Below are positions 1-64,000 of a stretch of 64,000 bases of DNA, piece by piece; position 1 is the stretch's first letter, and each line of letters opens with the position of its first letter. The stretch covers positions 4,154,001 to 4,218,000 of the forward strand of contig CM068771.1 in NCBI GenBank assembly GCA_035084275.1, read 5' to 3'. Under the pieces are notes generated by a model. The model saw nothing but the letters and a program-made list of their open reading frames with translations. It was not told the DNA's origin and made no database searches. This DNA comes from Hydrolagus colliei (lineage: Eukaryota). The translations under genes and the position numbers were made by a program.

Positions 1-34
1 TCCTAACTATTGTCGATTGTTTGTTACTGAACAG

Positions 35-3000
35 AGAGATTCACAGTCAATGTTCCCAGTCACCCTGCCCTAGCCATTGCTGGTTCAGACGTTGTCCTGG
101 ACTGTAAGTGTTCCACAAAGCTGCCATTAGAGGGTGTGGAGGTGAGATGGTTCAGGGTGAGATTCGACTCCCCTGTGCACTTATTTAAAGAGGGACATCA
201 TCAACTGGATATACAGGATGAAGCCTATAGACACAGAACACAACTGTTTGAAGAGAAGTTTATCAATGGTGATGTGTCTCTCAGACTGGAAGATGTACGG
301 GTGACAGATCATGGAGAGTACACATGTTTCGTCGAGTACGACGGATCGTATGAACAGGGAGTGATAGAGTTGAAAGTTATAGGTCAGTAATGTTTCCAAT
401 TCATTTAATTACATGTAATCTGTGTGTGCAAGAATTCACTCATCTTTAATAAGTTCAAAGTACAATAATTTCTATGAACAAGAATGTCCGTTTATTCAGA
501 ATGTTGTAGATGTGTTTTTGTTAAGTTACTGCACTGTAATGTCCCGGGTAAAATATTGTCTGATTCATGTCTCCTGTCTCTTCCAGGCCTTGGCAGTCAG
601 CCTTGGATTCATGTTGATGGACAACACAATGGTGGTGTGATGCTATTGTGTGAATCCAGTGGATGGTTCCCAGCACCAGAGGTTCTGTGGTTTGATGATC
701 AGGGAAACAAATTATCAACACTCAGTAACTGGACAGTCAAACAGGATTCTAAAGGTCTCTTCAGTGTTCAAAGCCAAATAGAAATAATCCATTCAACCAA
801 CAAGATCAAGTGTCTGATTCATAATTCAGAAAATGAACAAGAAGGAAAACTCCAAATCTTGGGTTGGTAAACACAGTAAATATTAATGTTGGTCTGAAAA
901 ATATGATGTAGATTTATTATAATAACTCTTGCATTTGAAATAACACTTTTCACGTTTTCTATGCATCTCAAATTGCTTCACAGAATATACTGTAAAATAT
1001 ATTGGCTGTGTATACATGGGCGAAACGTGGCAGAAAGTTGCGCACAGCAGTGTCCCTCAAACAGCTGTGTATTAAAATAACCAATTATTATTGTGTCTTT
1101 TTGAGGGACTATTATTAGCTGTGCAGAGTAAGGAAACTTGCCCAAAGTTTCACCCCACCGGGAATCAAACTCACGTCTCGCGCTTGTCAGGGGAGTGCTC
1201 TAATCACTGAGCTACAGGACTCCATAAAGTATTGTACAGGACTTCACTTGATGTGTTGTACAACACATGAAGTGAATACATATCGGTCTGGATGATACGG
1301 TCTATCTAATTTCATCCTTTCAAAATATGAAACTCGTAAGAATTAGGAGCAGGAGTAGGCCACTCGGTCGCTCGAGCCTGCCCCACCATTCAATAAGATC
1401 ATGGCTGATCTATTCTAACTCCATCTACCCGCGTTATCCCCATATCCATTCATCATCTCCTTTATCTCTCTATTATCCCTCTCATCATCTTTAATAACAA
1501 CTATTTACATTTGTAAATTGCCTTTCACATCGAGACAACGTCCCAATGTGGAAGATGCTATAAAACGTCAAAGATTTGGTCATGAGCTGGGGGATAGGGT
1601 CAAGAAGGATGGAAGGCAGGTGGGTGGGAGTAGGTGGGTGACCGAATGTATGGTCAAAGTGGTGGGTGTTGAAGGTGAGAAGGGACAGCCCGAGGTGGAG
1701 GGACTGTGGATGGGGTTCCAAAAATACCTCCGTACTCCAGCCCACCCAACCTTCCTGTTAATTATTAAAGCTGTTTATTATGTTAGGAATGAATCAATAC
1801 TGAATGTCAACGTGACTGAAGCTCTCCTGATTAGCTCCAGTCAGCGCCTTCACATCTCAGGTACTGGCAGCATCAACAACAACAACAAATTACATTTATA
1901 GAGCGCCTTTCACGTCGGGAGGACGTCCCAAGGCGCTGAATGTACAACCTCCATGGTTGTACATTCCATATCAACAAACCAGTCAGGAACCTAGATGTCT
2001 TGTTCTATCCTCAACTGTCTTTCCTCCCCCACTTACAAGCCGTGACTCATTCTGCCTTCAATCACCTCCGCAACATTGCCCAACTCCGCCACTAGGTCAC
2101 CCCTCAGGCCGCTGAAACTGTATCCAATATGATACCAGGCTTCACTTTGATTGAAGCCTGTGGTAGCGACTGAGCTATTGTGTGTAATACAGTAACATGG
2201 GGGTAAATGTAGGCATTTAGTGTTTGATATCAGAATAGATGTTTGAATGTATATTTACATTTCTTGACAGATGAGTTCTTCCCCAAAGTGCCAGTGGGTT
2301 TGGTGGTCTCCTCACTGCTCTTAGGACTTGCCATAATAGTGCTGAGTGTTCTTGTCGTCTACAGTGTAAAACAGCACCGAGAGATCAAAGGTACGTTTCC
2401 GTCAGTAACATCCCTCAACTTAACACTGTGTTACTGTTTGTGTGAGAATATGCAAGTTCTATAAATCAATTGCTTTCTCCCTTCACTCAGTAACCACCTG
2501 GCCTGTTTCATGTCACTGCCCTATTCTTCCCCCCCATCAGCAAGTTAGGCTTTCAACCTATCTGTCCCCACTCTCTGGAACTCAATCCAACTGTCTTTTC
2601 GAATCAGTCTTTCCAAATCACTGCCACATCATCCCATTCTGAAAGATGCTCTATAAATGTCATTTTGTTGTTGTTGTTTAATAGGCCCCCTCTCCCCACT
2701 CTCACTGACTCACTGGAGACAATAAAACAGCATCTTAGACTACCACAGCTTGGCTAAATTATTAATTATTGCAGTATTATCTCATCGCTCGCTCCTCTCT
2801 CCCTTCTCTCGTTGAACGCTCCACTCCACTCTTCTCTTATCACTCGCTCCACTCTCCCTTCTCCGCCTAAGGGTGCATCGCGCGAGGGCGGTGAACTCCC
2901 ATATGCAGACCAGCCAGCCAGCGCATATACGCACGTTATTCAATAAAGTCACGCATTTTTTTCTTCGCGCATGTTTGAGTTCACAATTGAGAAAGATGCG

Positions 3001-6000
3001 ATCGACGAGTGCCTACTGTAACTGAGTTGAGCTTTATTCTGTGTAGTTTATCGCTTGTTATTGTTGTAAACAGGTAGTTTGACCACTAAATAATACTGTA
3101 TTCAATATTGGTTTCTAACAGTTTTGCTTTGTATCCTCCAGATCTTGAGAAGACAGTTGGTAAGTCATCAAAGTAAAATAACAATCTCATATTATGATTA
3201 CTCTCACTCACAAGGTTCACACAAATCAGACGTAAGGTGGTGTTACAACACTTCTGTTTGCCAACAAAAGGCAAAGTTACTACACTCTCCTGTCAACCTG
3301 GGGAAATGCTCATGGGGAGCCAAATCAAATTCAAGGATTATTATTGTGGTATAAGGTTAACTTGCAATTCTTTAGCGCTCTCCACGCAGGGCAGCATCTC
3401 AAAGCACTTAAGAATGGCGGAGCCTGACTGTGGTCTGGGGGGGTGGTTGGGCCGTAAGCATGTAGGAAAAGGAATGTTTTAAGGCAGGTCTTAAGGGGAG
3501 ATGGGGAGCAAGGCAGAGGGATTGAAGGAGAGAATCCATTGTTTCGGGGGTCGGTCGCTGAATGTATAAAGGTGGAGAGGAGGGAAAGTTCGCTGGGAAG
3601 TTGACATGTATATGAGATACATGATAAGAGACTTGAAGGAGTATATGGATAGGGCAGAACAGCTGCTGTAAGAAAAGATTGCTTTAATAACTCTTACAAA
3701 CTAGATATTTCACGTCATTAACTGTTCATTTTCTTCGCTTAGACAACAGTGGCTTGTCAATATACACACATTTCAGGGAGGGGGTGGGGTGGATAGAATG
3801 AGCAAGCTTGTCAGTAACACAGGGAGTGAGTCAATGATGGAGGGATGGAGGAAATGAAAGAAGAAGGTATTGAGAGAGAACAACAACAATATTGCACTTA
3901 TATAGCGCTTTTCACGTCGGGAGGACGTCCCAAAGCGTCTCCCAAAACAAGGGAGTGATTTGGGAGCTACATAAGGTTTGATCACTTCTCTCTTGGTTCT
4001 AGGGTGGAAGAGGATTTGTAGGTGTGCAGGTAAGAGTCTAACTGCTAAAGGAACCTGACTCCCCCCCAACCACCCCGCCACACACTTACATTCCCTCCCC
4101 ACCCCCCACCCACCCCCCACACACATGAACTCAATCCCCACCCACACACATACTCCCGCTGAGGGTGGTGTGGGGGTATGTGATGGTATCTCACACACCA
4201 TCACATACCCCCACACCACTCACACACACTCATATCTCTCTCCCACACACACCATCAAATCCCCCCGACACACACATCACCTCACACCACACCCCCCACA
4301 CAACAACAAATATTACATTGATAGAGCGCCTTTCACATTGGGAAGATGTCCCAAGGCGCTGAACAGTCGGGTCAGGACCCGAGCAAGGGGGAGGGGCAAG
4401 GTGGGTGGGGGGAGGGGAGGGAGAGAGTTGGGAGGGCAGCTGATGGCACTGACCAAGAGGAGAGTCTTGAGACTGGCCTTGAAGGAGGTGAAGGGGAAGT
4501 GAGGTGAAGGGACTATGGGATGGAGTTTCAGAGTGTGGGGGCAGAGGCTGAAAGCCCGGCCACCAATGGGAGGGCAGATCAAGCGGAGAACATGGAGCAG
4601 CCTGGAGCCTGGGGTGGGCAGGTTGATAGGATGTCAGCCGGTCAGAGAGATAGGAGGGGGCAAGGTAGTGAAACGTCTTGAAAGTGAGGACAACCCCAAA
4701 CACCCCCTCCCCACAATGCACATAACCTCACAAGCCTCCAACACAACTCTCCCTCCTCCCCCCGCCCCCCCCCCCCCCCACACACACACCCCCACAAACA
4801 CCCTGGCATTCCCTCCCAACACACGCCCTCACATCTTCCCTCTGGCCCCCCCACCGCCGCACACATCCTCACTTCCCCTCACCTACACACACCCTCATGT
4901 CTCCCCCCCCAACACACATAGTCACATCTCCCGCACACACCCTCAAACAACACTCCTCACACAAACCTCCACATAACCCACAAACACCCTTACAGCTCTC
5001 CCCCACACACCTGCAAATTGCTCAGCCAAACACACCCTCATATTCCCCCCACCAAACACACTCACACCCGAACCCTACACACCCTCAGTCACAACTCCCC
5101 CACCACACACATCCTTGCATTCCTCACCCACACATATACACATATCCCCCCATACACACCCTCATATCCCCTCCACACACATCAAACTCCACCCACTAAA
5201 CCCTCACATAACCCTCACATCCCCACACACACAGCCTCACATTCCCCCTCACCCACATAACCTCACATCCCCCCAACACACACACCCTCACATCCCCCTA
5301 CACACACAGCCTCACATCCCCATACACACAGCCTCACATCCCCCTCACCCATAAACCCTCACATCCCCCCTACACACACACACCCTCACACCCCCCCTAC
5401 ACACACACACCCTCACATCCCCCCTACACACACACACCCTCACATCCCCCCTACACACACACACCCTCACATCCCCCCTCCACACTGACACACCCCAGTC
5501 CACACACCCTCACATTCCCCCTCCTCCCCCCCCCAACACACACCCTCACATCCCCCCCCAACACACACCCTCACATCCCATCACACACTCACCCCCAACA
5601 CAAACATTTCCCACCCCCACACATGCTCATAATCCCCTCCAGACTTACATCATCCCCACACACCCTCACATCCCACCCCTCACACACACCCTCACATCCC
5701 ACCCCTCACACACACCCTCCCACCCCTCACACACACCCTCACATCCCACCCCTCACACACACCCTCACATCCCACCCCTCACACACACCCTCACATCCCA
5801 CCCCTCACACACACCCTCACATCCCACCCCTCACACACACCCTCACATCCCACCCCTCACACACACCCTCACATCCCCCCTCTTCCTCTCCCCTCCACAC
5901 ACACCCCCACATCACCGCCCAACTCGTCCCCCTACCCCCCCCACACCCACACCCACAGACTCTGAGCCTTTGTGTTGGATTCTGTTCCCAGGAGATGTCA

Positions 6001-6615
6001 GTGTTTGACACAAAGGCTTCTCTCCCGATGCTGAAGATCATCTTATTTACAATTGTCAATGTGTCCGACATTAATGGTCTGGTTCTCACTCTAGTTACAG
6101 TCACTCTGGATCCTGACACAGCCCATCCCTGGCTCATCCTGTCTGAGGCCCTGACCAGTGTGAGACGCGGAGACACATGGCAGCCGCTCCCTGACACCCC
6201 AAAGAGGTTTAGTGTCTGTCACATTGTCCTGGGGTCTGAGGGCTTCACATCAGGGAGACATTACTGGGAGGTGCAGGTGGGGAACAAGACACAGTGCATT
6301 GTGGGATTGGCCAGAGAGTCTGTCAACAGGAAACAACCAATCACATGGTCACCAGAGGGCGGGGTCTGGGGGGTGGAGCTGGTGGGCGGGGCCTATGAGG
6401 CTCTGACGTCACCCCCCACCCCCCTGCCCCTGACAGTGAGACCCGGGAAGGTCGGAGTTCACCTGGACTATGAGGGGGGACAGGTGTCAGTTTACGACGC
6501 TGATCACATGTCTCATCTCCACACCTTCACCCAAACTTTCACTGGGAAACTCTATCCTCTCTTCTATGTCTGGTATGGTTCCGAGCCTCTGACAATCTGC
6601 CCAGTGACTGGTTAA
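35..6615 (+). CDS. Butyrophilin-like gene, copy A (signal-peptide exon lies upstream of the window)
   Basis: Exons with AG/GT boundaries and all phase-1 introns: IgV 35-382 (348 bp), IgC 587-862, TM 2271-2390 ([33 protein letters not shown]), 3142-3159 (DLEKTV), 4003-4029 (GWKRICRCA), B30.2/PRYSPRY 6095-6615 ([12 protein letters not shown]...GRHYWEV...LDYEGG...LTICP). Confidence 0.92.
915..1222 (-). mobile_element. Older copy of the same SINE in a BTNL intron (also 23138-23445 and 47233-47540)
   Basis: Degenerate head, core and tail on the minus strand. Confidence 0.7.
4297..4690 (-). mobile_element. L2-type LINE 3' end in a BTNL intron (also ~26520-26914 and ~50614-51008)
   Basis: [23 protein letters not shown]...IGGRAFS...FKASLKTLL with a (ttg)n tail. 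Similar fragments at ~1500-1740 and ~3340-3700. Confidence 0.75.
4700..5960. repeat. C/A-rich low-complexity minisatellite tract in the last BTNL intron (also ~26925-28140 and ~51020-51855)
   Basis: Almost no G on the + strand; ~26-bp sub-repeats such as ccctcacatcccacccctcacacaca in copy-specific numbers. Confidence 0.9.
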
Positions 6616-8996: not shown

Positions 8997-9004
8997 TCCA
9001 ATGG

Positions 9005-10134
9005 TTTCCAGAACTTTCTAGAAGCTTTAACACATTTTCAGCTGTTTTTCCATCACTTTCTAGAAGTTACAGTAGTCACCAGTAGTGCCCAGCCCACTTT
9101 CACATGAACTTTTGGCTCATTTTCAGCTGTACATTCTTAAAATATCTGCTGATTTCCATTAAGTTAGCACATTTCAATTCACTTTACAGTACATTCTGTG
9201 AAGCGCTTTGTGACGTCGATAAGATGTGAAAAAGCACCAGATCAAATGCAAGGATTATTATTATTATTTTCATATTAAGATAATAATTACAACTTCACGC
9301 AAACTTACATTCGACTTCAAGATGTTTTTGACATATTTACACATTTACATTGCACATAATGAATCTCTGGCTGATTTCCCAAAGTGTCTTAACTCTTTCC
9401 CCAGTATCAACAAAAGTTCCAAGCAATTTTATCTGAACGCCCGATGGTTTCCAGAACTCTCCGGAAGCTTTCGCACACATCCAGCACTTTCCAGAAGCTA
9501 CCGGCCGCGCCTGGTAATTTCGCATGAACCTCTGGCACGTGGCCAGCTGATCGTTCTGGAAGTTTAACCCGATTCCCGTTGATCCCGGACGTCTCCGCAC
9601 AATCACAACAACAACAACAATAATAATTCCACACGAATTCGCGGTTGATTCCGGCTGTTTTTCCCGCTAATTTTCAGCAGATTGCCAGCAGTTTGGAGGC
9701 ATTGTTTTTTTACTGAAGCTTGGGGCTGATTTTGAGGCGTTTGAGCCCCTTTTCCCTGTTGACCCCCACAGGTCTGAGCCCCTCCCCCAGGTCTGAGCCC
9801 CTCCCCCAGGTCTGAGCCCCTCCCCCAGGTCTGAGCCCCTCCCCCAGGTCTGAGCCCCTCCCCCAGGTCTGAGCCCCGCCCCCAGGTCTGAGCCCCGCCC
9901 CCAGGTCAGATCTCCCAGAGCTGGGAATGAAGTTCCTCTGATTTCCAGCTGTTTCTGGACTGGGTTCCTTCCTGAAGTCTCCACAACGTTCCACGCGCTC
10001 CGATTGGCGGCCGACCAGGAAGCGGCCCGGGGCGTCCTCTTTGTGACATCACCTTGACGCCCTCTCATTGGCCCCCCTCCACCCCCCCGAGGCCGCCAGG
10101 CCCCGCCCACAACCAAGAAACCAGCCTTTATATA
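9005..10134 (+). promoter_or_regulatory. HSP70 copy 1 promoter: HSE arrays, CCAAT boxes, GC box, TATA
   Basis: Perfect 4-unit HSE tTTCcaGAActTTCtaGAAg at 9005-9024; in-phase array 9449-9496; TTCTGGAA at 9554; proximal TTC-GAA-CTC-CAA-TTC at 9968-9992; ATTGG at ~10003 and ~10067; CCCCGCCC at ~10100; TATATA at 10129-10134. Confidence 0.88.
9771..9903. repeat. 19-bp minisatellite x7 in the HSP70 promoter (also 31936-32068 and 56245-56377)
   Basis: Unit ggtctgagcccctccccca, exactly 133 bp in all three copies. Confidence 0.95.
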
Positions 10135-10160
10135 CAGGGCGAGGAGTGAAGCCAGGCTCA

Positions 10161-10345
10161 GACACTGAGACAGACTGAGAGTCAGACTGACACTGAGACA
10201 GACTGACACTGAGACAGACTGACACTGAGACAGACTGACACTGAGACAGACTGACACTGAGACAGACTGACACTGAGACAGACTGACACTGAGACAGACT
10301 GACACTGAGACAGACTGAGAGTCAGACTGACACTGAGACAGACTG
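10161..10345. repeat. 16-bp VNTR in the HSP70 5' UTR (10 units here; 4 at 32322-32385; 13 at 56646-56877)
   Basis: Unit gacactgagacagact; copies 1 and 3 each also carry two 12-bp gagagtcagact variants. Confidence 0.95.
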
Positions 10346-10563
10346 ACACTGAGAGGGGCTGAGAGACTAAAAGCCTGAGAAACAAGAAGGGAGAGCGAGA
10401 GAAAGAAGAGAGAGAGCGAAGGACGGAGCTACAAGAAGAAGACATAAAGAGGAAAACACCTTCGCGGCGACTTCAGTCCAAGACTCACTGACATTGGGAC
10501 AGCGATTCGGAGCCAAAGGATCTAAGTCACGTACAGACGCGCTCACGTACAGACGGCAGGACA

Positions 10564-12468
10564 ATGGCCCCAGCGATTGGCATCGACCTGGGCACCACCT
10601 ACTCGTGTGTGGGTGTATTCCAGCACGGCAAGGTGGAGATCATCGCCAACGACCAGGGCAACCGCACCACACCCAGCTACGTGGCCTTCAACGACACCGA
10701 GAGGCTGATCGGCGAAGCCGCCAAGAACCAAGCGGCCCTCAACCCCCCCAACACCGTCTTTGATGCCAAGAGGCTGATCGGGAGGAAGTTCGATGACCCT
10801 GTGGTGCAGGCGGACATGAAGCACTGGCCTTTCCAGGTGGTGAGCCAGGGGGGCAAGCCCAAGGTGCAGGTTGAGTACAAGGGAGAGTCCAAGACGTTCA
10901 ACCCCGAAGAGATCTCGTCCATGGTTCTGACCAAGATGAAGGAGATCGCCGAGGCTTATCTGGGCTCCAGAGTCACCAACGCTGTCATCACGGTGCCCGC
11001 TTACTTCAACGACTCCCAGCGCCAGGCCACCAAAGACGCCGGGATGATCGCGGGGCTCAACGTCCTTCGCATCATTAATGAGCCCACGGCAGCCGCCATC
11101 GCCTACGGTCTGGACAAGAAGGGCCAGGGGGAGAAGAACGTCCTGATCTTTGACCTGGGTGGAGGCACCTTCGACGTGTCCATCCTCGCCATCGACGGCG
11201 GGATCTTTGAGGTCAAATCCACAGCCGGTGACACCCACCTGGGGGGCGAGGACTTTGACAGCCGTATGGTCGACCACTTCATCCAGGAGTTCAAGAGGAA
11301 AAACAAGAGGGACATCAGCCAGAACAAGAGAGCAGTCAGGAGGCTGAGGACAGCCTGCGAGAGAGCAAAGAGGACTCTGTCTTCAAGCACCCAAGCCAGC
11401 ATTGAGATCGACTCACTGTTTGAGGGAATTGACTTCTACACCTCCATCACCAGGGCACGGTTTGAGGAGCTCAATGGAGACCTGTTCAGAGGAACCCTGG
11501 AGCCAGTGGAGAAAGCGTTGACAGACGCCAAGCTGGACAAGTCTCAGATCCACGAAGTTGTCCTCGTCGGTGGCTCCACTCGCATCCCGAAGATCCAGAA
11601 GCTTCTACAGGATTTCTTCAACGGCCGAGAGCTGAACAAGAGCATCAACCCGGATGAGGCAGTGGCCTACGGGGCAGCTGTGCAAGCCGCCATCTTGATG
11701 GGCGACAAGTCTGAGAATGTGCAGGATCTGCTCCTGCTGGACGTGACTCCTCTGTCCCTGGGTCTGGAGACAGCGGGAGGCGTCATGACCTCCCTCATCA
11801 AGAGAAACTCAACCATACCCTCCAAACAGACCCAGGTCTTCACCACCTACTCCGACAACCAGTCCGGTGTCTTGGTGCAAGTCTACGAGGGCGAGAGAGC
11901 CATGACCAAGGACAACAACCTCCTGGGCAAGTTTGAGCTGAGTGGAATCCCCCCGGCTCCCCGCGGGGTCCCGCAGATCCAGGTTACCTTCGACATCGAT
12001 GCCAACGGCATCCTTAGTGTCTCGGCCGCTGACAAGAGCACTGGTAATGAGAACAAGATCACCATCACCAACGAGAAGGGCCGGCTGAGCAAGGAGGAGA
12101 TCGAGAGGATGGTGCAGGAGGCTGAGAGGTACAAGGCGGATGATGAGACGCAGCGGGAGAGGGTGATGGCCAAGAACAAGCTGGAGTCGTTCGTCTACAC
12201 AGCCAAATGTGCGATGGAGGACAAGAGCATGGAGGGCAAGGTGGGAGAGGAGGACAGGCGGCAGGTGCTGGACAAGTGCAAACAGGTCATCAACTGGCTG
12301 GATGGAAACCAGACAGCGGAGAAGGAAGAGTTTGAGCACCAGCTGAAGGAGCTGGAGAGGGTGTGCAGTCCTGTCATGGCCAGGCTGAGGCAGGGAGGGG
12401 CAGAGGGCGGTCAGCGATCAGGCAAGAGCTGCCCATCTACCGGCCCAACCGTGGAGGAAGTCGATTAA
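10564..12468 (+). CDS. hsp70: Intronless heat-inducible HSP70 (HSPA1-like), full length 634 aa ending in EEVD
   Basis: Signatures [22 protein letters not shown] and [14 protein letters not shown]; cytosolic C-terminus GPTVEEVD; no introns; HSE/CCAAT/TATA promoter. Confidence 0.98.
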
Positions 12469-17915: not shown

Positions 17916-18067
17916 CTGCCTCACTCCCTGCGCAGCCTCGACGAAGTCACATACGCAGAGATCAACTGGACCCCGATGAGGAGACCCAGCCCACAGCCCA
18001 GGGCTCTGTGTGCACACACTGACTACATACACACTGAGTACAGCAGCATCCGAACTGACACACTGAC
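17916..18067 (+). other. Orphan terminal exon of an inhibitory-receptor cytoplasmic tail (ITIM + ITSM), unit 1; runs into an N-gap
   Basis: Strong acceptor (ttctctctctcgtgtcttctccccacag) followed in phase 0 by LPHSLRSLDEVTYAEINWTPMRRPSPQPRALCAHTDYIHTEYSSIRTDTL. AATAAA downstream at 18901-18906. No upstream exons found in the unit. Confidence 0.6.
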
Positions 18068-18243
18068 NNNNNNNNNNNNNNNNNNNNNNNNNNNNNNNNN
18101 NNNNNNNNNNNNNNNNNNNNNNNNNNNNNNNNNNNNNNNNNNNNNNNNNNNNNNNNNNNNNNNNNNNNNNNNNNNNNNNNNNNNNNNNNNNNNNNNNNNN
18201 NNNNNNNNNNNNNNNNNNNNNNNNNNNNNNNNNNNNNNNNNNN
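18068..18243. other. Assembly gap (N run)
   Basis: 176 N. Confidence 1.
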
Positions 18244-18394
18244 GAGTACAGCAGCATCCGAACTGACACACTGACACACACACTGACACACACACACACT
18301 GACACACACACACACTGACACACACACACACTGACCACATACACACTGACACACACACACACTGACCACATACACACTGAGTACAGCAGCATCC

Positions 18395-18631
18395 NNNNNN
18401 NNNNNNNNNNNNNNNNNNNNNNNNNNNNNNNNNNNNNNNNNNNNNNNNNNNNNNNNNNNNNNNNNNNNNNNNNNNNNNNNNNNNNNNNNNNNNNNNNNNN
18501 NNNNNNNNNNNNNNNNNNNNNNNNNNNNNNNNNNNNNNNNNNNNNNNNNNNNNNNNNNNNNNNNNNNNNNNNNNNNNNNNNNNNNNNNNNNNNNNNNNNN
18601 NNNNNNNNNNNNNNNNNNNNNNNNNNNNNNN
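18395..18631. other. Assembly gap (N run)
   Basis: 237 N. Confidence 1.
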
Positions 18632-18940
18632 ACAATCTAAGTACACCAGTATCCGAGGTTGCAAAAACACACACACACATTCACTGAGTACACGAGCATC
18701 TGAACTGACACACATGTGGAACACACACATTAGCATTCACACGCACATTGAAACACACACACACACTGACACACACACACACTGACACTGACACACTGAC
18801 ACACACACACACACTGACACACACACACACTGACACACACACACACTGGGTACATCAGTAATTTAATGTAATTTAATTAACAGTAATTTAAAAAATGAAA
18901 AATAAAATTTTAATTGAAAAAAACTTTTGGTGCAATGTAT

Positions 18941-51100: not shown

Positions 51101-52510
51101 CACACACCCACAAACACCCTGGCATTCCCTCCCAACACACGCCCTCACATCTTCCCTCTGGCCCCCCCACCCCCCACCGCCGCACACATCCTCACTTCCC
51201 CTCACCTCCACACACCCTCATGTCTCCCCCCACAACACACATAGTCACATCTCCCGCACACACCCTCAAACAACACTCCTCACACAAACCTCCACATAAC
51301 CCACAAACACCCTTACAGCTCTCCCCCACACACCTGCAAATTGCTCAGCCAAACACACCCTCATATTCCCCCCACCAAACACACTCACACCCGAACCCTA
51401 CACACCCTCAGTCACAACTCCCCCACCACACACATCCTTGCATTCCTCACCCACACATATCCCCCCATACACACCCTCATATCGCCTCCACACACGTCAA
51501 ACTCCACCCACTAAACCCTCACATAACCCTCACATCCCCCTCCACAAACACACCCTCATATTCCCCCTCCACACTGACACACCCCAGTCCACACACATTC
51601 CCCCCTCCTCCTCCCCCCCAACACACACCCTCACATCCCATCACACACTCATCCCCAACACACACATTTCCCACCCCCACACATGCTCATAATCCCCTCC
51701 AGACTTATATCATCCCCACACACCCTCACATCCCACCCCTCACACACACCCTCACATCCCACCCCTCACACACATGCACATCACCCCCTCTTCCTCTCCC
51801 CTCCACACACCCCCCCACATCACCCCCCCCCCCCCCCCCCCCCACACCCACAGACTCTGAGCCTATGTGTTGGATTCTGTTCCCAGGAGATGTCAGTGTT
51901 TGACACAAAGGCTTCTCTCCCGAAGCTGAAGATCATCTTATTGATAATTGTCAATGTGTCCGACATTAATGGTCTGGTTCTCACTCTAGTTACAGTCACT
52001 CTGGATCCTGACACAGCCCATCCCCGGCTCATCCTGTCTGAGGACCTGACCAGTGTGAGAGATGGAGACACATGGCAGCCGCTCCCTGACACCCCAAAGA
52101 GGTTTAGTAAAGATCCCATTGTCCTGGGGTCTGAGGGCTTCACATCAGGGAGACATTACTGGGAGGTGCAGGTGGGGAACAAGACACAGTGCATTGTGGG
52201 ATTGGCCAGAGAGTCTGTCAACAGGAAACAATGGATCACATGGTCACCAGAGGGCGGGGTCTGGGGGGTGGAGCTGTGGGGCGGGGCCTATGAGGCTCTG
52301 ACGTCACCCCGCACCCCCCTGCCCCTGACAGTGAGACCCGGGAAGGTCGGAGTTCACCTGGACTATGAGGGGGGACAGGTGTCAGTTTACGACGCTGATC
52401 ACATGTCTCATCTCCACACCTTCACCCAAACTTTCACTGAGAGACTCTATCCTCTCTTCTATCCCGGGTTTGATTCTGAGCCTCTGACAATCTGCCCAGT
52501 GACTGGTTAA
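45137..52510 (+). CDS. Butyrophilin-like gene, copy C (complete, 455 aa)
   Basis: Exons 45137-45194, 46353-46700, 46905-47180, 48589-48708, 49460-49477, 50321-50347, 51990-52510, with the same splice sites as copy B. Confidence 0.92.
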
Positions 52511-57096: not shown

Positions 57097-58950
57097 ATGG
57101 CCCCAGCGATTGGCATCGACCTGGGCACCACCTACTCGTGTGTGGGTGTGTTCCAGCACGGCAAGGTGGAGATCATCGCCAACGACCAGGGCAACCGCAC
57201 CACACCCAGCTACGTGGCCTTCAACGACACCGAGAGGCTGATCGGCGAAGCCGCCAAGAACCAAGCAGCCCTCAACCCCCCCAACACCGTCTTCGATGCC
57301 AAGAGGCTGATCGGGAGGAAGTTCGATGACCCTGTGGTGCAGGCGGACATGAAGCACTGGCCTTTCCAGGTGGTGAGCCAGGGGGGCAAGCCCAAGGTGC
57401 AGGTTGAGTACAAGGGAGAGTCCAAGACGTTCAACCCCGAAGAGATCTCGTCCATGGTTCTGACCAAGATGAAGGAGATCGCCGAGGCTTATCTGGGCTC
57501 CAGAGTCACCAACGCTGTCATCACGGTGCCCGCTTACTTCAACGACTCCCAGCGCCAGGCCACCAAAGACGCCGGGATGATCGCGGGGCTCAACGTCCTT
57601 CGCATCATTAATGAACCCACGGCAGCCGCCATCGCCTACGGTCTGGACAAGAAGGGCCAGGGGGAGAAGAACGTCCTGATCTTTGACCTGGGTGGAGGCA
57701 CCTTCGACGTGTCCATCCTCGCCATCGACGGCGGGATCTTTGAGGTCAAATCCACAGCCGGTGACACCCACCTGGGGGGCGAGGACTTTGACAGCCGTAT
57801 GGTCGACCACTTCATCCAGGAGTTCAAGAGGAAAAACAAGAGGGACATCAGCCAGAACAAGAGAGCAGTCAGGAGGCTGAGGACAGCCTGCGAGAGAGCA
57901 AAGAGGACTCTGTCTTCAAGCACCCAAGCCAGCATTGAGATCGACTCACTGTTTGAGGGAATTGACTTCTACACCTCCATCACCAGGGCACGGTTTGAGG
58001 AGCTCAATGGAGACCTGTTCAGAGGAACCCTGGAGCCAGTGGAGAAAGCGTTGACAGACGCCAAGCTGGACAAGTCTCAGATCCACGAAGTTGTCCTCGT
58101 CGGTGGCTCCACTCGCATCCCGAAGATCCAGAAGCTTCTACAGGATTTCTTCAACGGCCGAGAGCTGAACAAGAGCATCAACCCGGATGAGGCAGTGGCC
58201 TACGGGGCAGCTGTGCAAGCCGCCATCTTGATGGGCGACAAGTCTGAGAATGTGCAGGATCTGCTCCTGCTGGACGTGACTCCTCTGTCCCTGGGTCTGG
58301 AGACAGCGGGAGGCGTCATGACCTCCCTCATCAAGAGAAACTCAACCATACCCTCCAAACAGACCCAGGTCTTCACCACCTACTCCGACAACCAGTCCGG
58401 TGTCTTGGTGCAAGTCTACGAGGGCGAGAGAGCCATGACCAAGGACAACAACCTCCTGGGCAAGTTTGAGCTGAGTGGAATCCCCCCGGCTCCCCGCGGG
58501 GTCCCGCAGATCCAGGTTACCTTCGACATCGATGCCAACGGCATCCTTAGTGTCTCGGCCGCTGACAAGAGCACTGGTAATGAGAACAAGATCACCATCA
58601 CCAACGAGAAGGGCCGGCTGAGCAAGGAGGAGATCGAGAGGATGGTGCAGGAGGCTGAGAGGTACAAGGCGGATGATGAGACGCAGCGGGAGAGGGTGAT
58701 GGCCAAGAACAAGCTGGAGTCATTCGTCTACACAGCCAAATGTGCGATGGAGGACAAGAGCATGGAGGGCAAGGTGGGAGAGGAGGACAGGCGGCAGGTG
58801 CTGGACAAGTGCAAACAGGTCATCAACTGGCTGGATGGAAACCAGACAGCGGAGAAGGAAGAGTTTGAGCACCAGCTGAAGGAGCTGGAGAGGGTGTGCA
58901 GTCCTGTCATGGCCAGGCTGAGGCAGGGAGGGGCAGAGGGCGGTCAGTGA
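57097..58950 (+). CDS. hsp70: Intronless HSP70, copy 3, truncated at 617 aa (no EEVD)
   Basis: Same CGA>TGA (58948-58950); the old tail is intact to TAA at 59001. Confidence 0.93.
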
Positions 58951-59323: not shown

Positions 59324-59354
<31 letters not shown>

Positions 59355-60335: not shown

Positions 60336-61865
60336 TTAAACTTTTTTATTGAAAAGTTCTCTCAAGTCGGACTGTACGAGATCAGCGTGGCGTCGCTCTC
60401 TGATGCTCGCAACGATGTCGTTAAGTGCGTTCGAAAACTTGTTGTAGAGTCCGCTCTTTAGTAAGAAGCGTTCAGCCTCTCGCAGGCCAGTCAGAGCTGT
60501 GCTGGCTGTCACAGGCGAGGCCCCATTGTCCTCAGAGTCGCTGTCGCTGCTGTTCTCGACTAGTAGGCGCTCGGCGGCAACAGCTTCGGCCACGATATTC
60601 TCCTGACCTTGCGGATCACGGCAAGGTAGATCAGAGTCAATGTACAGGAACTGGTCAGCGATCTGCCTCTCGCCCTCGGCCTCTGTGCTTGTCTTCTCGT
60701 CAGCCTCAGCACGGGGAGCAGCGTCACCAGACGCAAACCCTGCCTTTGCGAAGCAATTGGATATCATCGCAGGCTCCATGCTCTCCCAGGCCCTGGCAGC
60801 CATGCCGATGGCATCCAGCAGGCTGATGTGTCTGGCCATCTTTCCCACCGAGGCCTGGGGGATGATGGTGTTGCTGTCAATGGCGTCGAGGAGGCGATTC
60901 CGTAGCTCCTCGCGGTAGGAAAGCTTCAGGTGTCGGATGATTCCTTGACCCATGGGTTGGATCATGGTGGTGTCCGGGGGAATCAGCTCCAGGCAGATGT
61001 TCTTAAGCGTTGGGACGGTCAGATGACACGGTGCGCTGTCCATGAGAAGAAGAACTTTACGCCCCAGGTTGACCAGCTCTGTGTCCCACTGCACCAGCCA
61101 CTCCTTAAATATCGTTCCTGTCATCCACGCCATTTTGTTGGCCTTATAGGTGACAGGCAGAACGGCGCAGTCGACTCCCTGCATACAGCGAGGGCGCTGG
61201 CTCTTCCCGATGACCAGCAGTTTGCGCCGGTCGCAGCCGGTCATGTTGGCGCAGACCATCAGCGTGACACTGTCCGTCGCTCCCTTTACACCACTCGGCT
61301 CAGTCGGGTGCAAATACGAGCCGTTGGGCACCGCGCGATAGCGCAGCCCCGTTTGCTCCGCGTTGTAGATGGCATCTGGGGCATAGGAAGAGAGCAGCAC
61401 GGTGCGGGAGTTAGCGCCCTCTAGGCCAGCGCTCCTCAGCTTTCCGGGAAACAGCCTGTACACTATGTTGTTACGTGCCTTCCAGCGGCTAAACCAGCCG
61501 TCGGTCACGGTGAACCCCGGCTTCCCGAGCTCGTGCGCCAGGCTCTGCGCCTTGGCTTTGAGGATGGGCCCATTGAGCGGCTGCCCCTCGGTGGACGCCC
61601 TTTGGAACCACAGGAGGAGAGCGAGCTCCACCTGGGGATCTTTGCCTTTGCGATCCCTCTTCTTACGCAGACCCACGTCGCCCTCGGCCAAGGTGGCCGC
61701 TGTCCGGCGCAGCTTCGTCTCACTGGCGACGAGGTCACCCAGCGTCGACTTCTTGACCCCGAGCCTCCTGGCCAGTTCTCGCAGGGGAGTCCCCCGCGGC
61801 TCCAACTTGACCCTGTCTAACACTTCTATCTTCTCCAAAAGTGTCCGGGACATTTTCTTCGACAT
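60336..61865 (-). CDS. TIGD-like protein, copy 3 (509 aa)
   Basis: Intact ORF; differs from copy 2 at 2 residues (T/P, D/Y). Confidence 0.9.
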   Translation of the reverse strand: MSKKMSRTLLEKIEVLDRVKLEPRGTPLRELARRLGVKKSTLGDLVASETKLRRTAATLAEGDVGLRKKRDRKGKDPQVELALLLWFQRASTEGQPLNGPILKAKAQSLAHELGKPGFTVTDGWFSRWKARNNIVYRLFPGKLRSAGLEGANSRTVLLSSYAPDAIYNAEQTGLRYRAVPNGSYLHPTEPSGVKGATDSVTLMVCANMTGCDRRKLLVIGKSQRPRCMQGVDCAVLPVTYKANKMAWMTGTIFKEWLVQWDTELVNLGRKVLLLMDSAPCHLTVPTLKNICLELIPPDTTMIQPMGQGIIRHLKLSYREELRNRLLDAIDSNTIIPQASVGKMARHISLLDAIGMAARAWESMEPAMISNCFAKAGFASGDAAPRAEADEKTSTEAEGERQIADQFLYIDSDLPCRDPQGQENIVAEAVAAERLLVENSSDSDSEDNGASPVTASTALTGLREAERFLLKSGLYNKFSNALNDIVASIRERRHADLVQSDLRELFNKKV

Positions 61866-61985: not shown

Positions 61986-62116
61986 GGGAGGAAATGTCTG
62001 GTTCATTTCCGTCCGCCGGGAAATGTCCGGGAAGTGTCTGGTTCCTTCCCGAAGCGGTCGATGTCCCGCCCCCTTTCCCCCCCTCCCGCTGGCTGCTGAT
62101 TGGCCGCCCCCAGGGA
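61986..62116 (-). promoter_or_regulatory. Promoter of TIGD copy 3
   Basis: Same motifs as copy 1. Confidence 0.55.
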
Positions 62117-64000
62117 GCTTCAGCGAGTGGCTTACTGGAACAGACCAGGTTTGAGGCAGGAGGAAACACACACACACTTTATCTGCCGTGTTAGTATTAG
62201 TGCCCAGTCCCTCTTCACAAGTACCACTTTACCCTCTTTTCCCCCTTTCTCCCCCGGCCCCGATTTGGCTGCCGCGTTTCGCCCACAAACGTACAGTCAA
62301 TTCTCCTACCCTCCTTCATCCCACCCCGACCCCTCCCCATCACCCCTGCTCTTGTCCCTACCTGTCTGTACAGCTCCTCGGGACGTCCCCTCGACGCGAA
62401 AGGCGATATATAAACGTACGTTTTGATTGATTTAGTGGATGAAACGTGGCAGCCATTTGCACACGGCAGTGTCCCACAAACAGCCGTTGATTGGGTGACC
62501 CACAATCGAGTAACACGGGCATTCCTACTTACCACTAGTTAAACAGAGGCATGCGAAGGTACTTCCCTGCCCAGGAATCGACTCTGGGTCCTCTCGCTCG
62601 AGAGGCGAGAGAGCTAACCACTGAACTGCAAGACTCCACAAACTCAACGGTGCTCGATTGCCTTTGCAATCTGCACACCAACTGATTCACTGGGACTATT
62701 TAAGCTGTTGTTGGCTGAATGAGAATATTGGTCATGTATTGCAGAATGCACAGCTTTGAATATACATCTTGAAATACAATAATAATAATAATAATCCTTG
62801 CATTTGACGCAGCGCTTTTCACACTTCATCGTCTTAGAGATTTTTCAAAGCGCTTCACGGAATATACTGTGAAGTGAAGCGACTGTATATATTTGTGGGC
62901 GAAACGCAGCAGCCAATTGCGCACAGCAGCGTCCCCCACACACAGTCGTGGATTGAAATGACAAATTTCTTTATTGTGTTTATTTGGAGGGATTATTATT
63001 GTGTGTGTGTGTGTGTCTGTGTGTATGTGTGGAGTAAGGAAACTTGCCCAAGGTTTCGCCCTGACCTGCCTGGATTTGAACACAGGTCTCACGCTCGTGA
63101 AGGCGAGTGCTCTAACCACTGAGCTACAGGAGCTACAGAATATAATATATTATGTTATAACGAGGGCTGGTTTAAAGCAAAATCTCAGAAGTATCCAATA
63201 CCAATGCCATTTTAGAAACTAAATTTAAAAATTTTGTTTAATTAAATTTAAAATATCTCCCCGAGAGCCAACCCCCTCCCGCCCGATCTAAGCCTGCTCT
63301 TCCCTTGTGGAGAGGTGCAGCCATGTGGTCGGTGACTGAGAGTGAAACTCGTCTCTTCGCTTCTCACACGATTGCAAACAGTGGCTCCAACGCGCCCCTC
63401 ACTGGCCAGCCTTAACACACAGCTTCCAATTGTGTGTGTGTGTGCACAGTCAGTATGTGTGTGTGCGTGTGTGTGTGTGTGTATGTAAAGTCTATGTGTA
63501 TGTATCTGTGTGTATGCAGACTGTGTGTTTGTAGTCTGTGTGTACAGTATGTGTGTGGGCGTATATACATTCTGTGTGTGTACAGTATATTGACTACAAA
63601 CACTGACTACACACATACACTACAGTGTGTGAAGTATACAGTAGTTTACGGTGTGTGAGTGTATGTACGATCAGTGGATATACACAGTCACTGTGGGTCT
63701 AAATAAATGCAAACTAAGAATAAGAATAATCCTCGCATTTGGTACAGCACCTCATTAGGTCTTTGAGACGTCTCAAAGCCAGAGTACACTGTAACAGACT
63801 GTACATTTTGTGGGCAAAATGCTGTAGCCAACTGCGCACAGCAGCGTCCCCCCAAAAGGTAGTGGATCGAGGGACCAAATTCTTATAGTTTTTTATTTTT
63901 TAAGGGATTATTACTCCCGAAAATGGCAACTCGCCAATCGACAGGTTTCTACTTGCTGCTAGGCATATAGAGGCCCCATCCTACTTAACCAATCTACTCT

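What the first reader, a model, noticed from the sequence alone, without database searches (positions are those of the whole stretch)
1..64000. Co-amplified three-gene immune/stress cassette: IFN-type BTNL, heat-shock HSP70 and a dead transposase
Seen: at least three tandem units each keep open frames for BTNL(+), HSP70(+) and TIGD(-). HSP70 and TIGD are tail-to-tail; TIGD and the next BTNL are head-to-head about 5.7 kb apart. Divergence is partitioned: BTNL varies in B30.2, HSP70 in its C-terminus and 5' UTR length, TIGD by scattered replacements. I know of no described cassette of this composition, but cannot search to confirm. Inference: BTNL diversification may drive the expansion with the other genes hitch-hiking, or the unit may work as an infection/fever-responsive module.
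Basis: partly seen in the sequence, partly recalled or inferred. Interest (0 to 1): 0.75.

Follow-up and report, generated by a model that had tools for sequence, protein, structure and literature searches.

The report
Tandem butyrophilin-HSP70-tamed-transposase gene block
A chimaera-type fish carries a 22-24 kb block repeated head to tail, holding an immune butyrophilin gene, a heat-shock HSP70 gene and a catalytically dead but conserved transposase-derived gene; the same three-gene neighbourhood exists in the elephant shark, so this is a young amplification of an old MHC-type gene cluster, not a new purpose-built cassette.

Summary
The window has about 2.9 tandem units (period 22.0-24.5 kb). 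Each unit carries a 7-exon butyrophilin-like gene (BTNL, +), an intronless HSP70 (+) and a 509-codon pogo/Tigger-type ORF (TIGD, -).

- **Units are young or homogenised.** Substitution divergence is 0.1-0.5% over most of the unit, introns included.
- **One sharp exception.** The B30.2 exon plus about 230 nt (up to 285 nt) of its 3' flank differs by 4-7%, in short alternating tracts. All 19 variable residues sit at family-wide hypervariable positions.
- **HSP70.** All copies keep a canonical heat-shock promoter. Copies B and C stop at codon 618 and lose EEVD. All 7 other inter-copy changes are synonymous.
- **TIGD.** It lacks two of three catalytic residues and has no terminal inverted repeats. 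It is under purifying selection against its elephant-shark orthologue (dN/dS 0.36; DNA-binding part 0.14).
- **Outgroup.** Elephant shark has the same BTN-HSP70-TIGD order and orientation twice on one 4.1 Mb BTN/TRIM scaffold.

Best reading: recombination-driven tandem amplification of an ancestral MHC-type neighbourhood, with concerted evolution and B30.2 diversification. It is comparable to the human RCCX module.

An adjacent window of this scan reached a similar verdict (s1-138766).

The parts
35..6615 (+). BTNL copy A, exons 2-7 (IgV 35-382, IgC 587-862, TM 2271-2390, 3142-3159, 4003-4029, B30.2 6095-6615); leader exon lies upstream of the window
   Evidence: tblastn with C. milii BTN1A1-like P0024 and splice-site mapping; PRY+SPRY Pfam hits
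9006..10563 (+). HSP70-A promoter and predicted 5'UTR: perfect 4-unit HSE at 9006-9023, further HSE-like clusters at 9449-9566 and 9969, two CCAAT boxes, a GC box, TATA at 10127-10139, and a 16-nt tandem repeat at 10161-10354
   Evidence: HSE pattern found 6 times against 0.64 expected; sequence read; repeat; TATA-to-ATG distance 437/317/485 nt in A/B/C. The transcription start is inferred, not shown.
10564..12468 (+). HSP70 copy A, 634 aa, intronless, ends in EEVD
   Evidence: Pfam HSP70 1e-260; 94% identical to C. milii HSP70 P0155; dN/dS 0.11 against C. milii
13790..15319 (-). TIGD copy A, 509 aa, a domesticated pogo/Tigger-type transposase gene (triad E170-D276-G306)
   Evidence: Pfam DDE_1 and HTH_Tnp_Tc5; triad alignment; no TIRs; dN/dS 0.37 against the intact C. 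milii copy
17916..18848 (+). Orphan ITIM/ITSM receptor tail exon followed by a CA-rich, ITSM-coding repeat; holds N runs 18068-18243 and 18395-18631. Likely marks the unit junction.
   Evidence: Sequence read; 17815-18037 is 100% identical to 42249-42471; earlier notes s1-138850 and s1-138812
19572..20222 (-). 216-aa ORF, probably a retroelement fragment, present in units A and B (43668-44318)
   Evidence: ORF lists; no Pfam hit; the retroelement reading is from motif memory only
20524..20535 (-). ISRE-like site (GAAAGTGAAACC) about 510 nt upstream of the BTNL-B ATG; second copy at 44619-44630
   Evidence: Pattern search (the total count is near chance); perfectly conserved within a conserved promoter block in C. 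milii L001
21042..28796 (+). BTNL copy B, complete 455-aa gene: 21042-21099, 22258-22605, 22810-23085, 24494-24613, 25365-25382, 26226-26252, 28276-28796
   Evidence: Spliced ORF is open with GT-AG at every intron
32605..34458 (+). HSP70 copy B, 617 aa, stops at codon 618 (CGA to TGA); the former EEVD tail and stop follow in frame up to 34509
35836..37365 (-). TIGD copy B, 509 aa
39219..41855 (.). B-specific 2.6 kb insertion with a LINE-like ORF fragment; absent from A and C
   Evidence: Alignment gaps; ORF at 40141-40377; the LINE reading is inferred from motif memory
42249..42950 (+). Second copy of the orphan tail exon plus CA-rich repeat, ending in N run 42679-42950
45137..52510 (+). BTNL copy C, complete 455-aa gene: 45137-45194, 46353-46700, 46905-47180, 48589-48708, 49460-49477, 50321-50347, 51990-52510
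57097..58950 (+). HSP70 copy C, 617 aa, same R618* stop
60336..61865 (-). TIGD copy C, 509 aa
5950..6900 (+). Divergence island in unit A coordinates (B30.2 exon plus about 230-285 nt of 3' flank); equivalents lie near 28130-29070 and 51850-52800
   Evidence: 3.8-4.8% divergence in the exon and 4-6.7% in 6616-6900, against 0.26-0.44% in the 5 kb upstream; no differences from 6843 to 7555

Best explanation
This is a young, recombination-driven tandem amplification of an ancestral holocephalan gene neighbourhood: butyrophilin(+) - inducible HSP70(+) - domesticated pogo gene TIGD(-). It lies inside an MHC-class-III-type BTN/TRIM cluster.

How it most likely works:
- Unequal crossing-over between units changes copy number. 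The CA-rich repeat behind an orphan receptor tail exon is a likely junction (inferred).
- Gene conversion and crossing-over keep most of each unit nearly identical (concerted evolution).
- The B30.2 exon, which encodes the cytoplasmic ligand-binding domain of the butyrophilin, escapes homogenisation or receives short conversion tracts. As a result the copies differ almost only at the hypervariable binding-surface positions.
- HSP70 and TIGD are real, selected host genes that are copied because they sit inside the unit. They are not known to need the butyrophilin.
- After the first duplication one HSP70 copy acquired R618* (loss of EEVD), and that version was amplified further.

Shown: the anatomy, the divergence pattern, the conserved synteny and the selection statistics. 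Inferred: the recombination mechanism, the order of events, expression and inducibility.
For: 1. About 2.9 units with period 22.0-24.5 kb. Substitution divergence is only 0.1-0.5% over most of the unit, introns included.
2. Mosaic relationships along the unit: A=B against C at 7.4-9.8 kb, B=C against A at 12.2-15.7 kb, A=C against B at 16.2-16.9 kb. This is the signature of recombination or conversion among units.
3. The B30.2 island diverges by 3.8-4.8%, and its 3' flank by 4-6.7%. The odd-one-out alternates in tracts of about 5-100 nt.
4. The 19 variable residues fall on family-wide hypervariable columns (entropy 1.85 against 0.71 bits across 87 B30.2 sequences, p=2e-5). Raw nonsynonymous:synonymous counts are 18:2, 24:1 and 20:1. 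B30.2 dN/dS against a C. milii paralogue is about 1.0-1.2, against 0.55-0.64 for the Ig exons.
5. The trio is ancestral. C. milii MU249860.1 has BTN(+)-HSP70(+)-TIGD(-) at 2.097-2.119 Mb (L002) and, inverted, at 2.213-2.234 Mb (L005), with the same spacing. The two are 97.5% identical to each other over 9 kb and about 85-89% identical to the window. Blocks therefore duplicate independently, or are homogenised, in both lineages.
6. HSP70 is selected. dN/dS is 0.11 against C. milii. All 7 inter-copy substitutions other than R618* are synonymous, with binomial p about 3e-5 at a synonymous-site share of 0.229. The 4 substitutions private to the truncated copies are all synonymous (p about 0.003).
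7. TIGD is domesticated. The triad is E-D-G, shared with C. milii. There are no TIRs. Synteny is conserved. dN/dS is 0.35-0.37 (p about 1e-10), with 0.14 for the DNA-binding part and 0.50 for the DDE part. C. milii protein AFK11349.1 appears to be cDNA-derived (the cDNA origin is from my own knowledge of that accession series).
8. Each unit has private structural marks: the B-specific LINE-like insert, a C-specific insert of about 570 nt, and different 5'UTR repeat numbers.
9. Tandem HSP70 arrays are ordinary in cartilaginous fishes; the skate locus L006 holds three copies 6.7 kb apart.
Against: - No read-depth, long-read or population data could be obtained, so copy number and even the tandem order rest on the assembly. 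An N run sits at every unit junction seen.
- Path-averaged dN/dS among the three B30.2 copies is only 1.4-2.4 and is not significant on its own (p 0.09-0.37). The island also extends into non-coding sequence, so diversifying selection is not demonstrated.
- No conversion donor was identified.
- Among the three recent TIGD copies the ratio is 7 nonsynonymous to 3 synonymous, which cannot distinguish constraint from neutrality.
- That the trio has stayed together since before the two holocephalan lineages split, and is co-duplicated in both, could mean more than passive linkage.
Confidence: 0.68

Rival explanations
1. The block is a functional stress/infection module. The three genes are kept together and amplified together because they are co-regulated (heat-shock elements plus an interferon element) or act together, for example with TIGD as a DNA-binding regulator of the unit.
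For: - The trio keeps the same order, orientation and spacing in two holocephalan lineages and is co-duplicated in both.
- HSE arrays lie between BTNL and HSP70.
- A conserved ISRE-like site lies upstream of BTNL.
- The TIGD DNA-binding domain is strongly constrained (dN/dS 0.14).
Against: - In C. milii each trio has lost one partner. HSP70 is frameshifted in L005 and TIGD is truncated in L002. A BTN-TIGD pair exists without HSP70 (L001), and BTN genes exist without either partner (L003, L004).
- Skate HSP70 amplifies on its own.
- The overall ISRE pattern count is near chance (9 against 5.15 expected).
- No expression data are available.
Confidence: 0.1
2. Selection for HSP70 dosage or a new HSP70 function (the EEVD-less chaperone) drives the amplification, and BTNL and TIGD are the passengers.
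For: - All inter-copy HSP70 changes except R618* are synonymous, including those private to the truncated copies.
- The R618* version is the one that was amplified (copies B and C, and further copies according to notes).
- Tandem HSP70 expansion recurs in cartilaginous fishes.
- All copies keep intact promoters.
Against: - A 2-kb intronless gene can amplify in 6.7-kb units, as in skate, so a 22-kb unit is not needed.
- The only segment showing diversification is B30.2, not HSP70.
- The numbers of substitutions are small, and gene conversion could mimic constraint.
Confidence: 0.12
3. Much of the array is an assembly artefact: haplotypes or mis-joined repeat copies laid in tandem, so the true copy number is one or two.
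For: - N runs sit at each unit junction in the window (18068-18631 and 42679-42950).
- Background divergence of 0.1-0.5% is in the range of heterozygosity.
- Unit lengths depend on estimated gaps.
Against: - There are three distinct B30.2 exons, three different 5'UTR repeat lengths, a private 2.6 kb insert in B and a private insert in C. Two haplotypes of one copy cannot give three versions.
- Unchecked notes of this scan report further units over at least 120 kb beyond the window.
- C. milii independently shows duplicated trios.
Confidence: 0.08
4. TIGD is an active or recently active transposon that inserted here and promotes the rearrangements.
For: It has the pogo/Tigger domain architecture. 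DNA transposons can seed rearrangements.
Against: - Two of three catalytic residues are replaced (E-D-G), and the replacements are shared with C. milii.
- No terminal inverted repeats were found; the flanking inverted repeats are SINE-like copies at 71-76% complementarity.
- The gene sits at the same position and in the same orientation in C. milii.
Confidence: 0.02

Closest known systems
Human RCCX module (STK19-C4-CYP21-TNX) in MHC class III
   Same: A multi-gene unit of tens of kb repeated in tandem inside the MHC class III region. Unequal crossover changes copy number and gene conversion transfers short tracts. Some copies carry truncated or inactive genes (PMC8362596).
   Different: The gene content is entirely different. 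Here there are at least 3 units in the window, and more according to unchecked notes. One exon (B30.2) is kept diverse rather than being degraded by conversion. Copy-number variation among individuals is untested.
HSPA1A/HSPA1B/HSPA1L cluster in mammalian MHC class III, and tandem HSP70 arrays in skate
   Same: Intronless, heat-inducible HSP70 genes duplicated within an MHC-type region, with a promoter of HSE, CCAAT, GC box and TATA (the mammalian layout is from established knowledge). Skate locus L006 has three tandem copies.
   Different: Here the repeat unit also carries a butyrophilin and a pogo-derived gene. Most copies lack the C-terminal EEVD motif.
Primate BTN3A1/A2/A3 cluster
   Same: Tandem butyrophilin paralogues whose IgV ectodomains are homogenised by concerted evolution, while the cytoplasmic B30.2 part differs and determines ligand sensing (PMC6790196; PMC8210570).
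   Different: Here whole units, introns included, are near-identical. Homogenisation is therefore not specific to the ectodomain. No ligand or receptor is known.
Hypervariable B30.2 loops of TRIM5alpha, fish finTRIM and other immune TRIM/BTN proteins
   Same: Differences are concentrated in a few loop positions of PRY/SPRY. dN/dS is about 1 or higher across the domain while the framework is conserved (the comparison with TRIM5 and finTRIM is from established knowledge).
   Different: The variation here sits among tandem copies that are otherwise 99.5% or more identical, and it extends into the 3'UTR as a tract mosaic.
Domesticated pogo genes of vertebrates (TIGD1-7, JRK, JRKL, CENPB, POGK, POGZ)
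   Same: CENP-B/Tc5-type DNA-binding domain plus a retained DDE_1 fold with a partly lost triad; a fixed genomic position; purifying selection (PMC7386202).
   Different: Not an orthologue of mammalian TIGD6, which arose in Theria according to PMC7386202. The closest relatives are in C. milii (80%) and coelacanth (about 60%). It is multi-copy because it rides a segmental duplication, and it is linked to BTN and HSP70.

Membership tests
Butyrophilin (BTN/BTNL) | Leader, IgV, IgC, transmembrane segment, short heptad exons and a cytoplasmic B30.2 (PRY/SPRY) domain in one gene | tested here: met
   A 7-exon, 455-aa open spliced frame in copies B and C, colinear with C. milii BTN1A1-like proteins of 453-455 aa. 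PRY and SPRY Pfam hits. The closest solved B30.2 domains are pyrin, BTN2A2, TRIM21 and BTN3A1.
   One ISRE-like site is conserved in C. milii, but the pattern count in the window is near chance. No expression data.
Inducible cytosolic HSP70 (HSPA1-type) | Full-length HSP70 ATPase and substrate-binding domains encoded without introns | tested here: met
   Pfam HSP70 profile positions 1-598 of 599 matched in a single ORF. The best solved-structure matches are full-length HSPA1A and HSPA2 chains.
Inducible cytosolic HSP70 (HSPA1-type) | Heat-shock elements and a TATA promoter upstream | tested here: met
   A perfect 4-unit HSE and further HSE-like clusters, CCAAT boxes, a GC box and TATA in every unit. 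Inducibility itself was not tested.
Inducible cytosolic HSP70 (HSPA1-type) | C-terminal EEVD motif for TPR co-chaperones | tested here: not met
   Present in copy A only. Copies B and C stop at codon 618, 17 residues early.
Active pogo/Tigger DNA transposon | Intact DDD catalytic triad | tested here: not met
   D1 is replaced by E170 and D3 by G306; D276 is kept. Homologues carry D at all three positions.
Active pogo/Tigger DNA transposon | Terminal inverted repeats flanking the ORF | tested here: not met
   Only SINE-like inverted copies at 71-76% complementarity were found.
Domesticated transposase gene | Fixed orthologous position in different species | tested here: met
   Same place and orientation next to HSP70 and BTN in C. 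milii loci L002 and L005.
Domesticated transposase gene | Purifying selection on the ORF | tested here: met
   dN/dS 0.35-0.37 with Fisher p about 1e-10; 0.14 for the DNA-binding part. Undecided among the three recent copies (7 nonsynonymous to 3 synonymous).
Mammalian TIGD6 orthologue | Orthology to therian TIGD6 | tested here: inconclusive
   The name comes from automatic annotation of the C. milii protein. No mammalian TIGD appeared among the 18 hits. PMC7386202 dates TIGD6 to Theria. No tree was built.
RCCX-like modular tandem CNV in the MHC | Multi-gene unit in tandem with evidence of NAHR or gene conversion | tested here: met
RCCX-like modular tandem CNV in the MHC | Copy number varies between haplotypes or individuals | not testable with these tools
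MHC class III-type location | Linkage to class III markers | not tested
   RNF5 and EGFL8 nearby are reported only in unchecked notes of this scan. The C. milii counterpart is a 4.1 Mb BTN/TRIM scaffold.

The most novel reading that the evidence does not exclude
The array is a battery of intracellular sensors. Butyrophilin copies share one invariant ectodomain but carry different B30.2 binding pockets, which are shuffled among units by short-tract gene conversion. Different cytosolic ligands would then be reported to one cell-surface partner, an early-vertebrate counterpart of BTN3A1-type inside-out signalling. In this reading the conserved linkage to HSP70 and to a DNA-binding pogo-derived gene reflects shared stress regulation and is not an accident.
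Probability: 0.12. Interest if true: 0.75.

Novelty: new variant of a known kind. Interest (0 to 1): 0.45.

Why it matters
- **MHC history.** In the oldest surviving jawed-vertebrate lineage, butyrophilin and inducible HSP70 sit side by side, with class III markers reported nearby by unchecked notes of this scan. Both genes are MHC residents in mammals. This bears on how the primordial MHC was organised.
- **A model of selective diversification.** The locus gives a clean natural case of concerted evolution that spares a single ligand-binding exon.
- **A new tamed transposase.** It adds an apparently undescribed, independently domesticated pogo gene whose DNA-binding domain is strongly conserved.
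- **A natural HSP70 variant.** It provides several natural EEVD-less HSP70 copies that still look constrained.

None of these is a new kind of system, but each can be tested directly.

Tried and rejected
- **Reads:** No read depth, long-read or RNA evidence was obtained, and read laying was not used.
- **Transposon ends:** the search for TIRs around TIGD found only SINE-like inverted copies.
- **RNA families:** the Rfam scan of the whole window gave no hits.
- **Other ORFs:** a Pfam scan of seven other ORFs, including the 216-aa ORF at 19572-20222 and the ORF in the B-specific insert, gave no hits.
- **Failed look-ups:** exact look-ups of P0001, P0025 and P0164 found no contig. The white-shark HSP70 locus returned no DNA and no neighbouring genes. 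Whether the BTN-HSP70 adjacency extends to elasmobranchs is therefore still open.
- **Ectodomain selection rejected:** 'purifying selection explains the identical BTNL ectodomain exons' was considered and rejected, because the intervening introns are just as identical.
- **Positive selection rejected as sole cause:** 'positive selection alone explains the B30.2 divergence' was considered and rejected, because the island continues into the 3'UTR and path-averaged dN/dS is not significant.
- **Pocket mapping not done:** mapping the variable B30.2 positions onto the BTN3A1 phosphoantigen pocket was possible only from memory of that sequence. Patch 41-43 and positions 82, 108 and 159-162 seem to line up with pocket residues. 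No tool returned a residue-level alignment to BTN3A1, so this is a lead and not a result.
- **Literature:** searches found no description of a BTN-HSP70-TIGD block.

Full report
**1. What is in the window**

Self-comparison shows about 2.9 head-to-tail copies of a unit of 22.0-24.5 kb. A 1-10230 matches B 22224-32395 at 97.9%. A 10285-16925 matches B 32322-38974 at 98.6%. 18860-27736 matches 42951-51827 at 98.5%. B 32322-38974 matches C 56818-63471 at 99.4%.

Each unit holds three genes:
- An intronless HSP70 ORF on the + strand: 10564-12468, 32605-34458 and 57097-58950, each matching Pfam HSP70 at E about 1e-260.
- A 509-codon ORF on the - strand with DDE_1 and HTH_Tnp_Tc5 domains: 13790-15319, 35836-37365 and 60336-61865.
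- A butyrophilin-like gene (BTNL) on the + strand.

I mapped the BTNL exons using elephant-shark BTN1A1-like proteins found with the B30.2 exon. There are seven exons: leader, IgV, IgC, TM, two short exons and B30.2. All have GT-AG borders. Copies B and C splice into open 455-aa frames. Copy A is open from IgV onward, and its leader lies upstream of the window.

The best TIGD hit is a Callorhinchus milii protein at 80% identity. The best HSP70 hit is C. milii at 94%. The genome is therefore a holocephalan other than C. milii.

**2. The assembly gaps**

The three N runs (18068-18243, 18395-18631 and 42679-42950) all lie in a CA-rich repeat. Its unit encodes an ITSM-like motif, and it sits behind an orphan receptor tail exon, between TIGD and the next BTNL.
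- They interrupt none of the three genes.
- The sequences on both sides are colinear between units A and B. 17815-18037 is 100% identical to 42249-42471, and 18860 onward matches 42951 onward.
- Continuity and length across the N runs are unknowable from the window, so unit lengths are estimates.
- Long ORFs listed across the N runs are artefacts.

**3. Pattern of divergence**

I aligned the three units and counted substitutions only. The picture is much more extreme than the BLAST identities suggest.
- The 5 kb covering BTNL exons 2-6 with their introns differ by 0.26-0.44%.
- HSP70 CDS copies differ by 0.21-0.31%.
- TIGD CDS copies differ by 0.26-0.59%.
- BTNL exons 1-6 have 0-1 differences in 847 nt, but the introns are just as similar. 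This reflects recent duplication or homogenisation, not ectodomain constraint.

The relationships switch along the unit. A=B against C at about 7.4-9.8 kb, B=C against A at about 12.2-15.7 kb, and A=C against B at about 16.2-16.9 kb. That is the pattern expected from unequal crossing-over and gene conversion among array members.

The copies also carry private structural marks:
- a 2.6 kb insert with a LINE-like ORF in B (39219-41855);
- an insert of about 570 nt in C;
- different copy numbers of a 16-nt repeat in the predicted HSP70 5'UTR, giving TATA-to-ATG distances of 437, 317 and 485 nt.

**4. The B30.2 island**

The B30.2 exon is the exception to this near-identity.
- It shows 20-25 differences in 521 nt (3.8-4.8%). 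Raw nonsynonymous:synonymous counts are 18:2, 24:1 and 20:1.
- The 19 variable residues lie in patches at positions 13, 19, 25, 41-43, 67-68, 82, 95, 97, 108, 110, 151-152 and 159-162.
- These patches coincide with the most variable columns of 87 distinct, mostly elephant-shark, B30.2 domains. Mean entropy is 1.85 against 0.71 bits, Mann-Whitney p=2e-5.
- Some variants recur in elephant-shark paralogues, for example SKDPI in 6 of 87 sequences. Others are private.

Two findings temper a simple positive-selection reading. First, path-averaged Nei-Gojobori dN/dS is 1.4-2.4 and is not significant alone (p 0.09-0.37). Second, the island continues for about 230 nt into the 3'UTR (last difference at 6843; 6616-6900 differs by 4-6.7%), then stops abruptly, with no differences from 6843 to 7555.

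Within the island the odd copy out alternates in short runs: C at 6149-6218, B at 6292-6297, C at 6337-6339, B at 6372-6377, A at 6545-6582, B at 6656-6755 and A at 6776-6836. This tract mosaic points to short-tract gene conversion, or to old segments protected from homogenisation, with selection filtering what survives at binding-surface positions.

Against one elephant-shark paralogue, B30.2 has dN/dS of about 1.0-1.2 with low dS (0.11). The IgV and IgC exons give 0.64 and 0.55.

**5. HSP70**

- Copy A ends in EEVD. Copies B and C carry CGA to TGA at codon 618 and lose 17 residues.
- All seven other substitutions among the copies are synonymous. With a synonymous-site share of 0.229, the chance of this under neutrality is about 3e-5. 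For the four changes private to the truncated copies it is about 0.003. Gene conversion could inflate the apparent constraint.
- dN/dS against the elephant-shark gene is 0.11.
- Every unit has the same promoter features: a perfect four-unit heat-shock element (9006-9023, 31171-31188, 55480-55497; 6 pattern matches against 0.64 expected), further HSE-like clusters, two CCAAT boxes, a GC box and a TATA box about 30 nt before the 16-nt repeat.
- The transcription start and heat inducibility are inferred.

**6. TIGD**

- Alignment with 18 homologues shows that the first catalytic Asp is Glu (position 170) and the third is Gly (position 306). Asp276 is kept. The elephant-shark protein shares both replacements.
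- No terminal inverted repeats flank the ORF.
- Against the intact elephant-shark copy (L005 10001-11533, XP_042200744.1), dN/dS is 0.35-0.37 with Fisher p about 1e-10. The N-terminal DNA-binding part gives 0.14 and the DDE part 0.50.
- The near-identical elephant-shark protein AFK11349.1 belongs, to my knowledge, to a full-length cDNA series, which would indicate transcription.
- TIGD is therefore a domesticated pogo-type gene, not a decaying relic.
- Gao et al. date mammalian TIGD6 to Theria (PMC7386202). The automatic name 'TIGD6-like' therefore should not be read as orthology.
- Among the three recent copies the substitutions are 7 nonsynonymous and 3 synonymous, which decides nothing.

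**7.

All loci below are on elephant-shark scaffold MU249860.1, a 4.1 Mb scaffold full of BTN and TRIM genes.
- **L002 (2.097-2.119 Mb):** BTN(+), then an intact 634-aa HSP70(+) 3.9 kb downstream, then TIGD(-) truncated to residues of about 202-508, then a TRIM gene.
- **L005 (2.213-2.234 Mb, inverted):** BTN, an HSP70 whose N-terminal part falls in three reading frames (apparent frameshifts), and the intact TIGD. Spacing is the same 7.2 kb from the B30.2 end to the TIGD stop as in the window.
- **L002 against L005:** 97.5% identical over 9 kb, and about 85-89% identical to the window.
- **L001 (0.73 Mb):** BTN followed by a frameshifted TIGD, with no HSP70.
- **L003 and L004:** BTN genes with neither partner.
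- **Little skate (L006):** three HSP70 genes 6.7 kb apart, with nothing between them.

The trio therefore predates the split of the two holocephalan lineages (dS about 0.28-0.30). Blocks containing it duplicate, or are homogenised, independently in each lineage, and partners are readily lost after duplication.

**8. Interpretation**

The most economical account is an RCCX-like situation (PMC8362596). A multi-gene unit in an MHC-type region is amplified by non-allelic homologous recombination and kept similar by conversion. One exon, the butyrophilin's B30.2, stays diverse. HSP70 and TIGD are genuine selected genes that ride along.

The parallel with primate BTN3A genes is close but not exact. 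Those genes have homogenised IgV domains and differing B30.2 domains (PMC6790196). Here, entire units are homogenised.

- The 'infection/fever module' idea is not excluded. Regulatory elements are present and the trio is old. The elephant-shark copies that lost one partner argue against obligatory cooperation.
- An assembly artefact cannot be ruled out without reads. Three distinct versions of several features need at least two true copies.
- Unchecked notes of this scan report more units beyond the window and the class III markers RNF5 and EGFL8 nearby.
- An earlier follow-up on the adjacent window (s1-138766) reached a similar 'expansion with passengers' verdict. My window adds four things: the outgroup synteny, the TIGD selection test, the HSP70 synonymous-only pattern and the tract structure of the B30.2 island.
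- That report stated that every copy has a broken gene. In this window, unit A has a full-length HSP70, an intact TIGD and an intact BTNL as far as the window shows.

**9. Limits**

- No conversion donor was found.
- The age estimate is rough. It rests on my recollection that the two holocephalan lineages split roughly 170-190 million years ago, which no tool or paper here checked. On that assumption and a constant rate, background divergence of 0.3% against an interspecies dS of 0.3 gives about 1% of the split time, on the order of 1-2 million years.
- The mapping of variable residues onto known B30.2 ligand pockets is from memory only.

Noticed in passing
window 17916-18067 and 42350-42500: Each unit carries an orphan exon with a splice acceptor that encodes an ITIM (VTYAEI) and an ITSM (TEYSSI). 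It is followed by a CA-rich repeat whose unit re-encodes the ITSM. It looks like a copied last exon of the inhibitory receptor gene upstream of the window, and so it probably marks the original duplication breakpoint.
   Followed up: partly
window 10161-10354, 32322-32400, 56646-56898: A 16-nt tandem repeat (GACACTGAGACAGACT) starts at about the predicted HSP70 transcription start. Its copy number differs between units: a GACTGA[CG]A motif count gives 12, 4 and 13 matches in A, B and C. The predicted 5'UTR length therefore varies between copies.
   Followed up: partly
window 8301-8700 vs 9010-9429 (and equivalents in B and C): A segment of about 400 nt upstream of HSP70 is duplicated inside each unit, 709 nt apart at about 83% identity. 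The downstream copy begins with the perfect heat-shock element. The upstream copy has only one-mismatch versions.
   Followed up: no
window 5026-5950 (and 27250-28100, 51350-51800): The last BTNL intron holds a C/A-rich tandem repeat of about 26 nt with strong strand skew. Its length differs between units, and it creates long spurious ORFs that run into the B30.2 exon (for example 5623-6615).
   Followed up: partly
L002 and L005 (C. milii MU249860.1, 2.10 and 2.22 Mb): The two elephant-shark trios show complementary decay. One keeps HSP70 intact and has a truncated TIGD. The other keeps TIGD intact and has an HSP70 with apparent frameshifts near its 5' end. The frameshifts could also be assembly errors.
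   Followed up: partly
window TIGD codon 171 (within 14805-14810 region of copy A; copies B and C differ): Copies B and C changed the residue next to the former first catalytic position (NAEETG to NAEQTG). Copy C also has D408Y. The numbers are too small to tell relaxation from drift.
   Followed up: no
L006 (Leucoraja erinacea JAMYXN010000098.1): Three 640-aa HSP70 genes lie in tandem at 6.7 kb spacing in the little skate. Tandem HSP70 amplification may therefore be common in cartilaginous fishes.
   Followed up: no
window B30.2 exons vs L001: Synonymous divergence of B30.2 between the two species' paralogues is only about 0.11, against 0.28-0.30 for HSP70 and TIGD. This suggests family-wide homogenisation of the B30.2 framework at the nucleotide level.
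   Followed up: no
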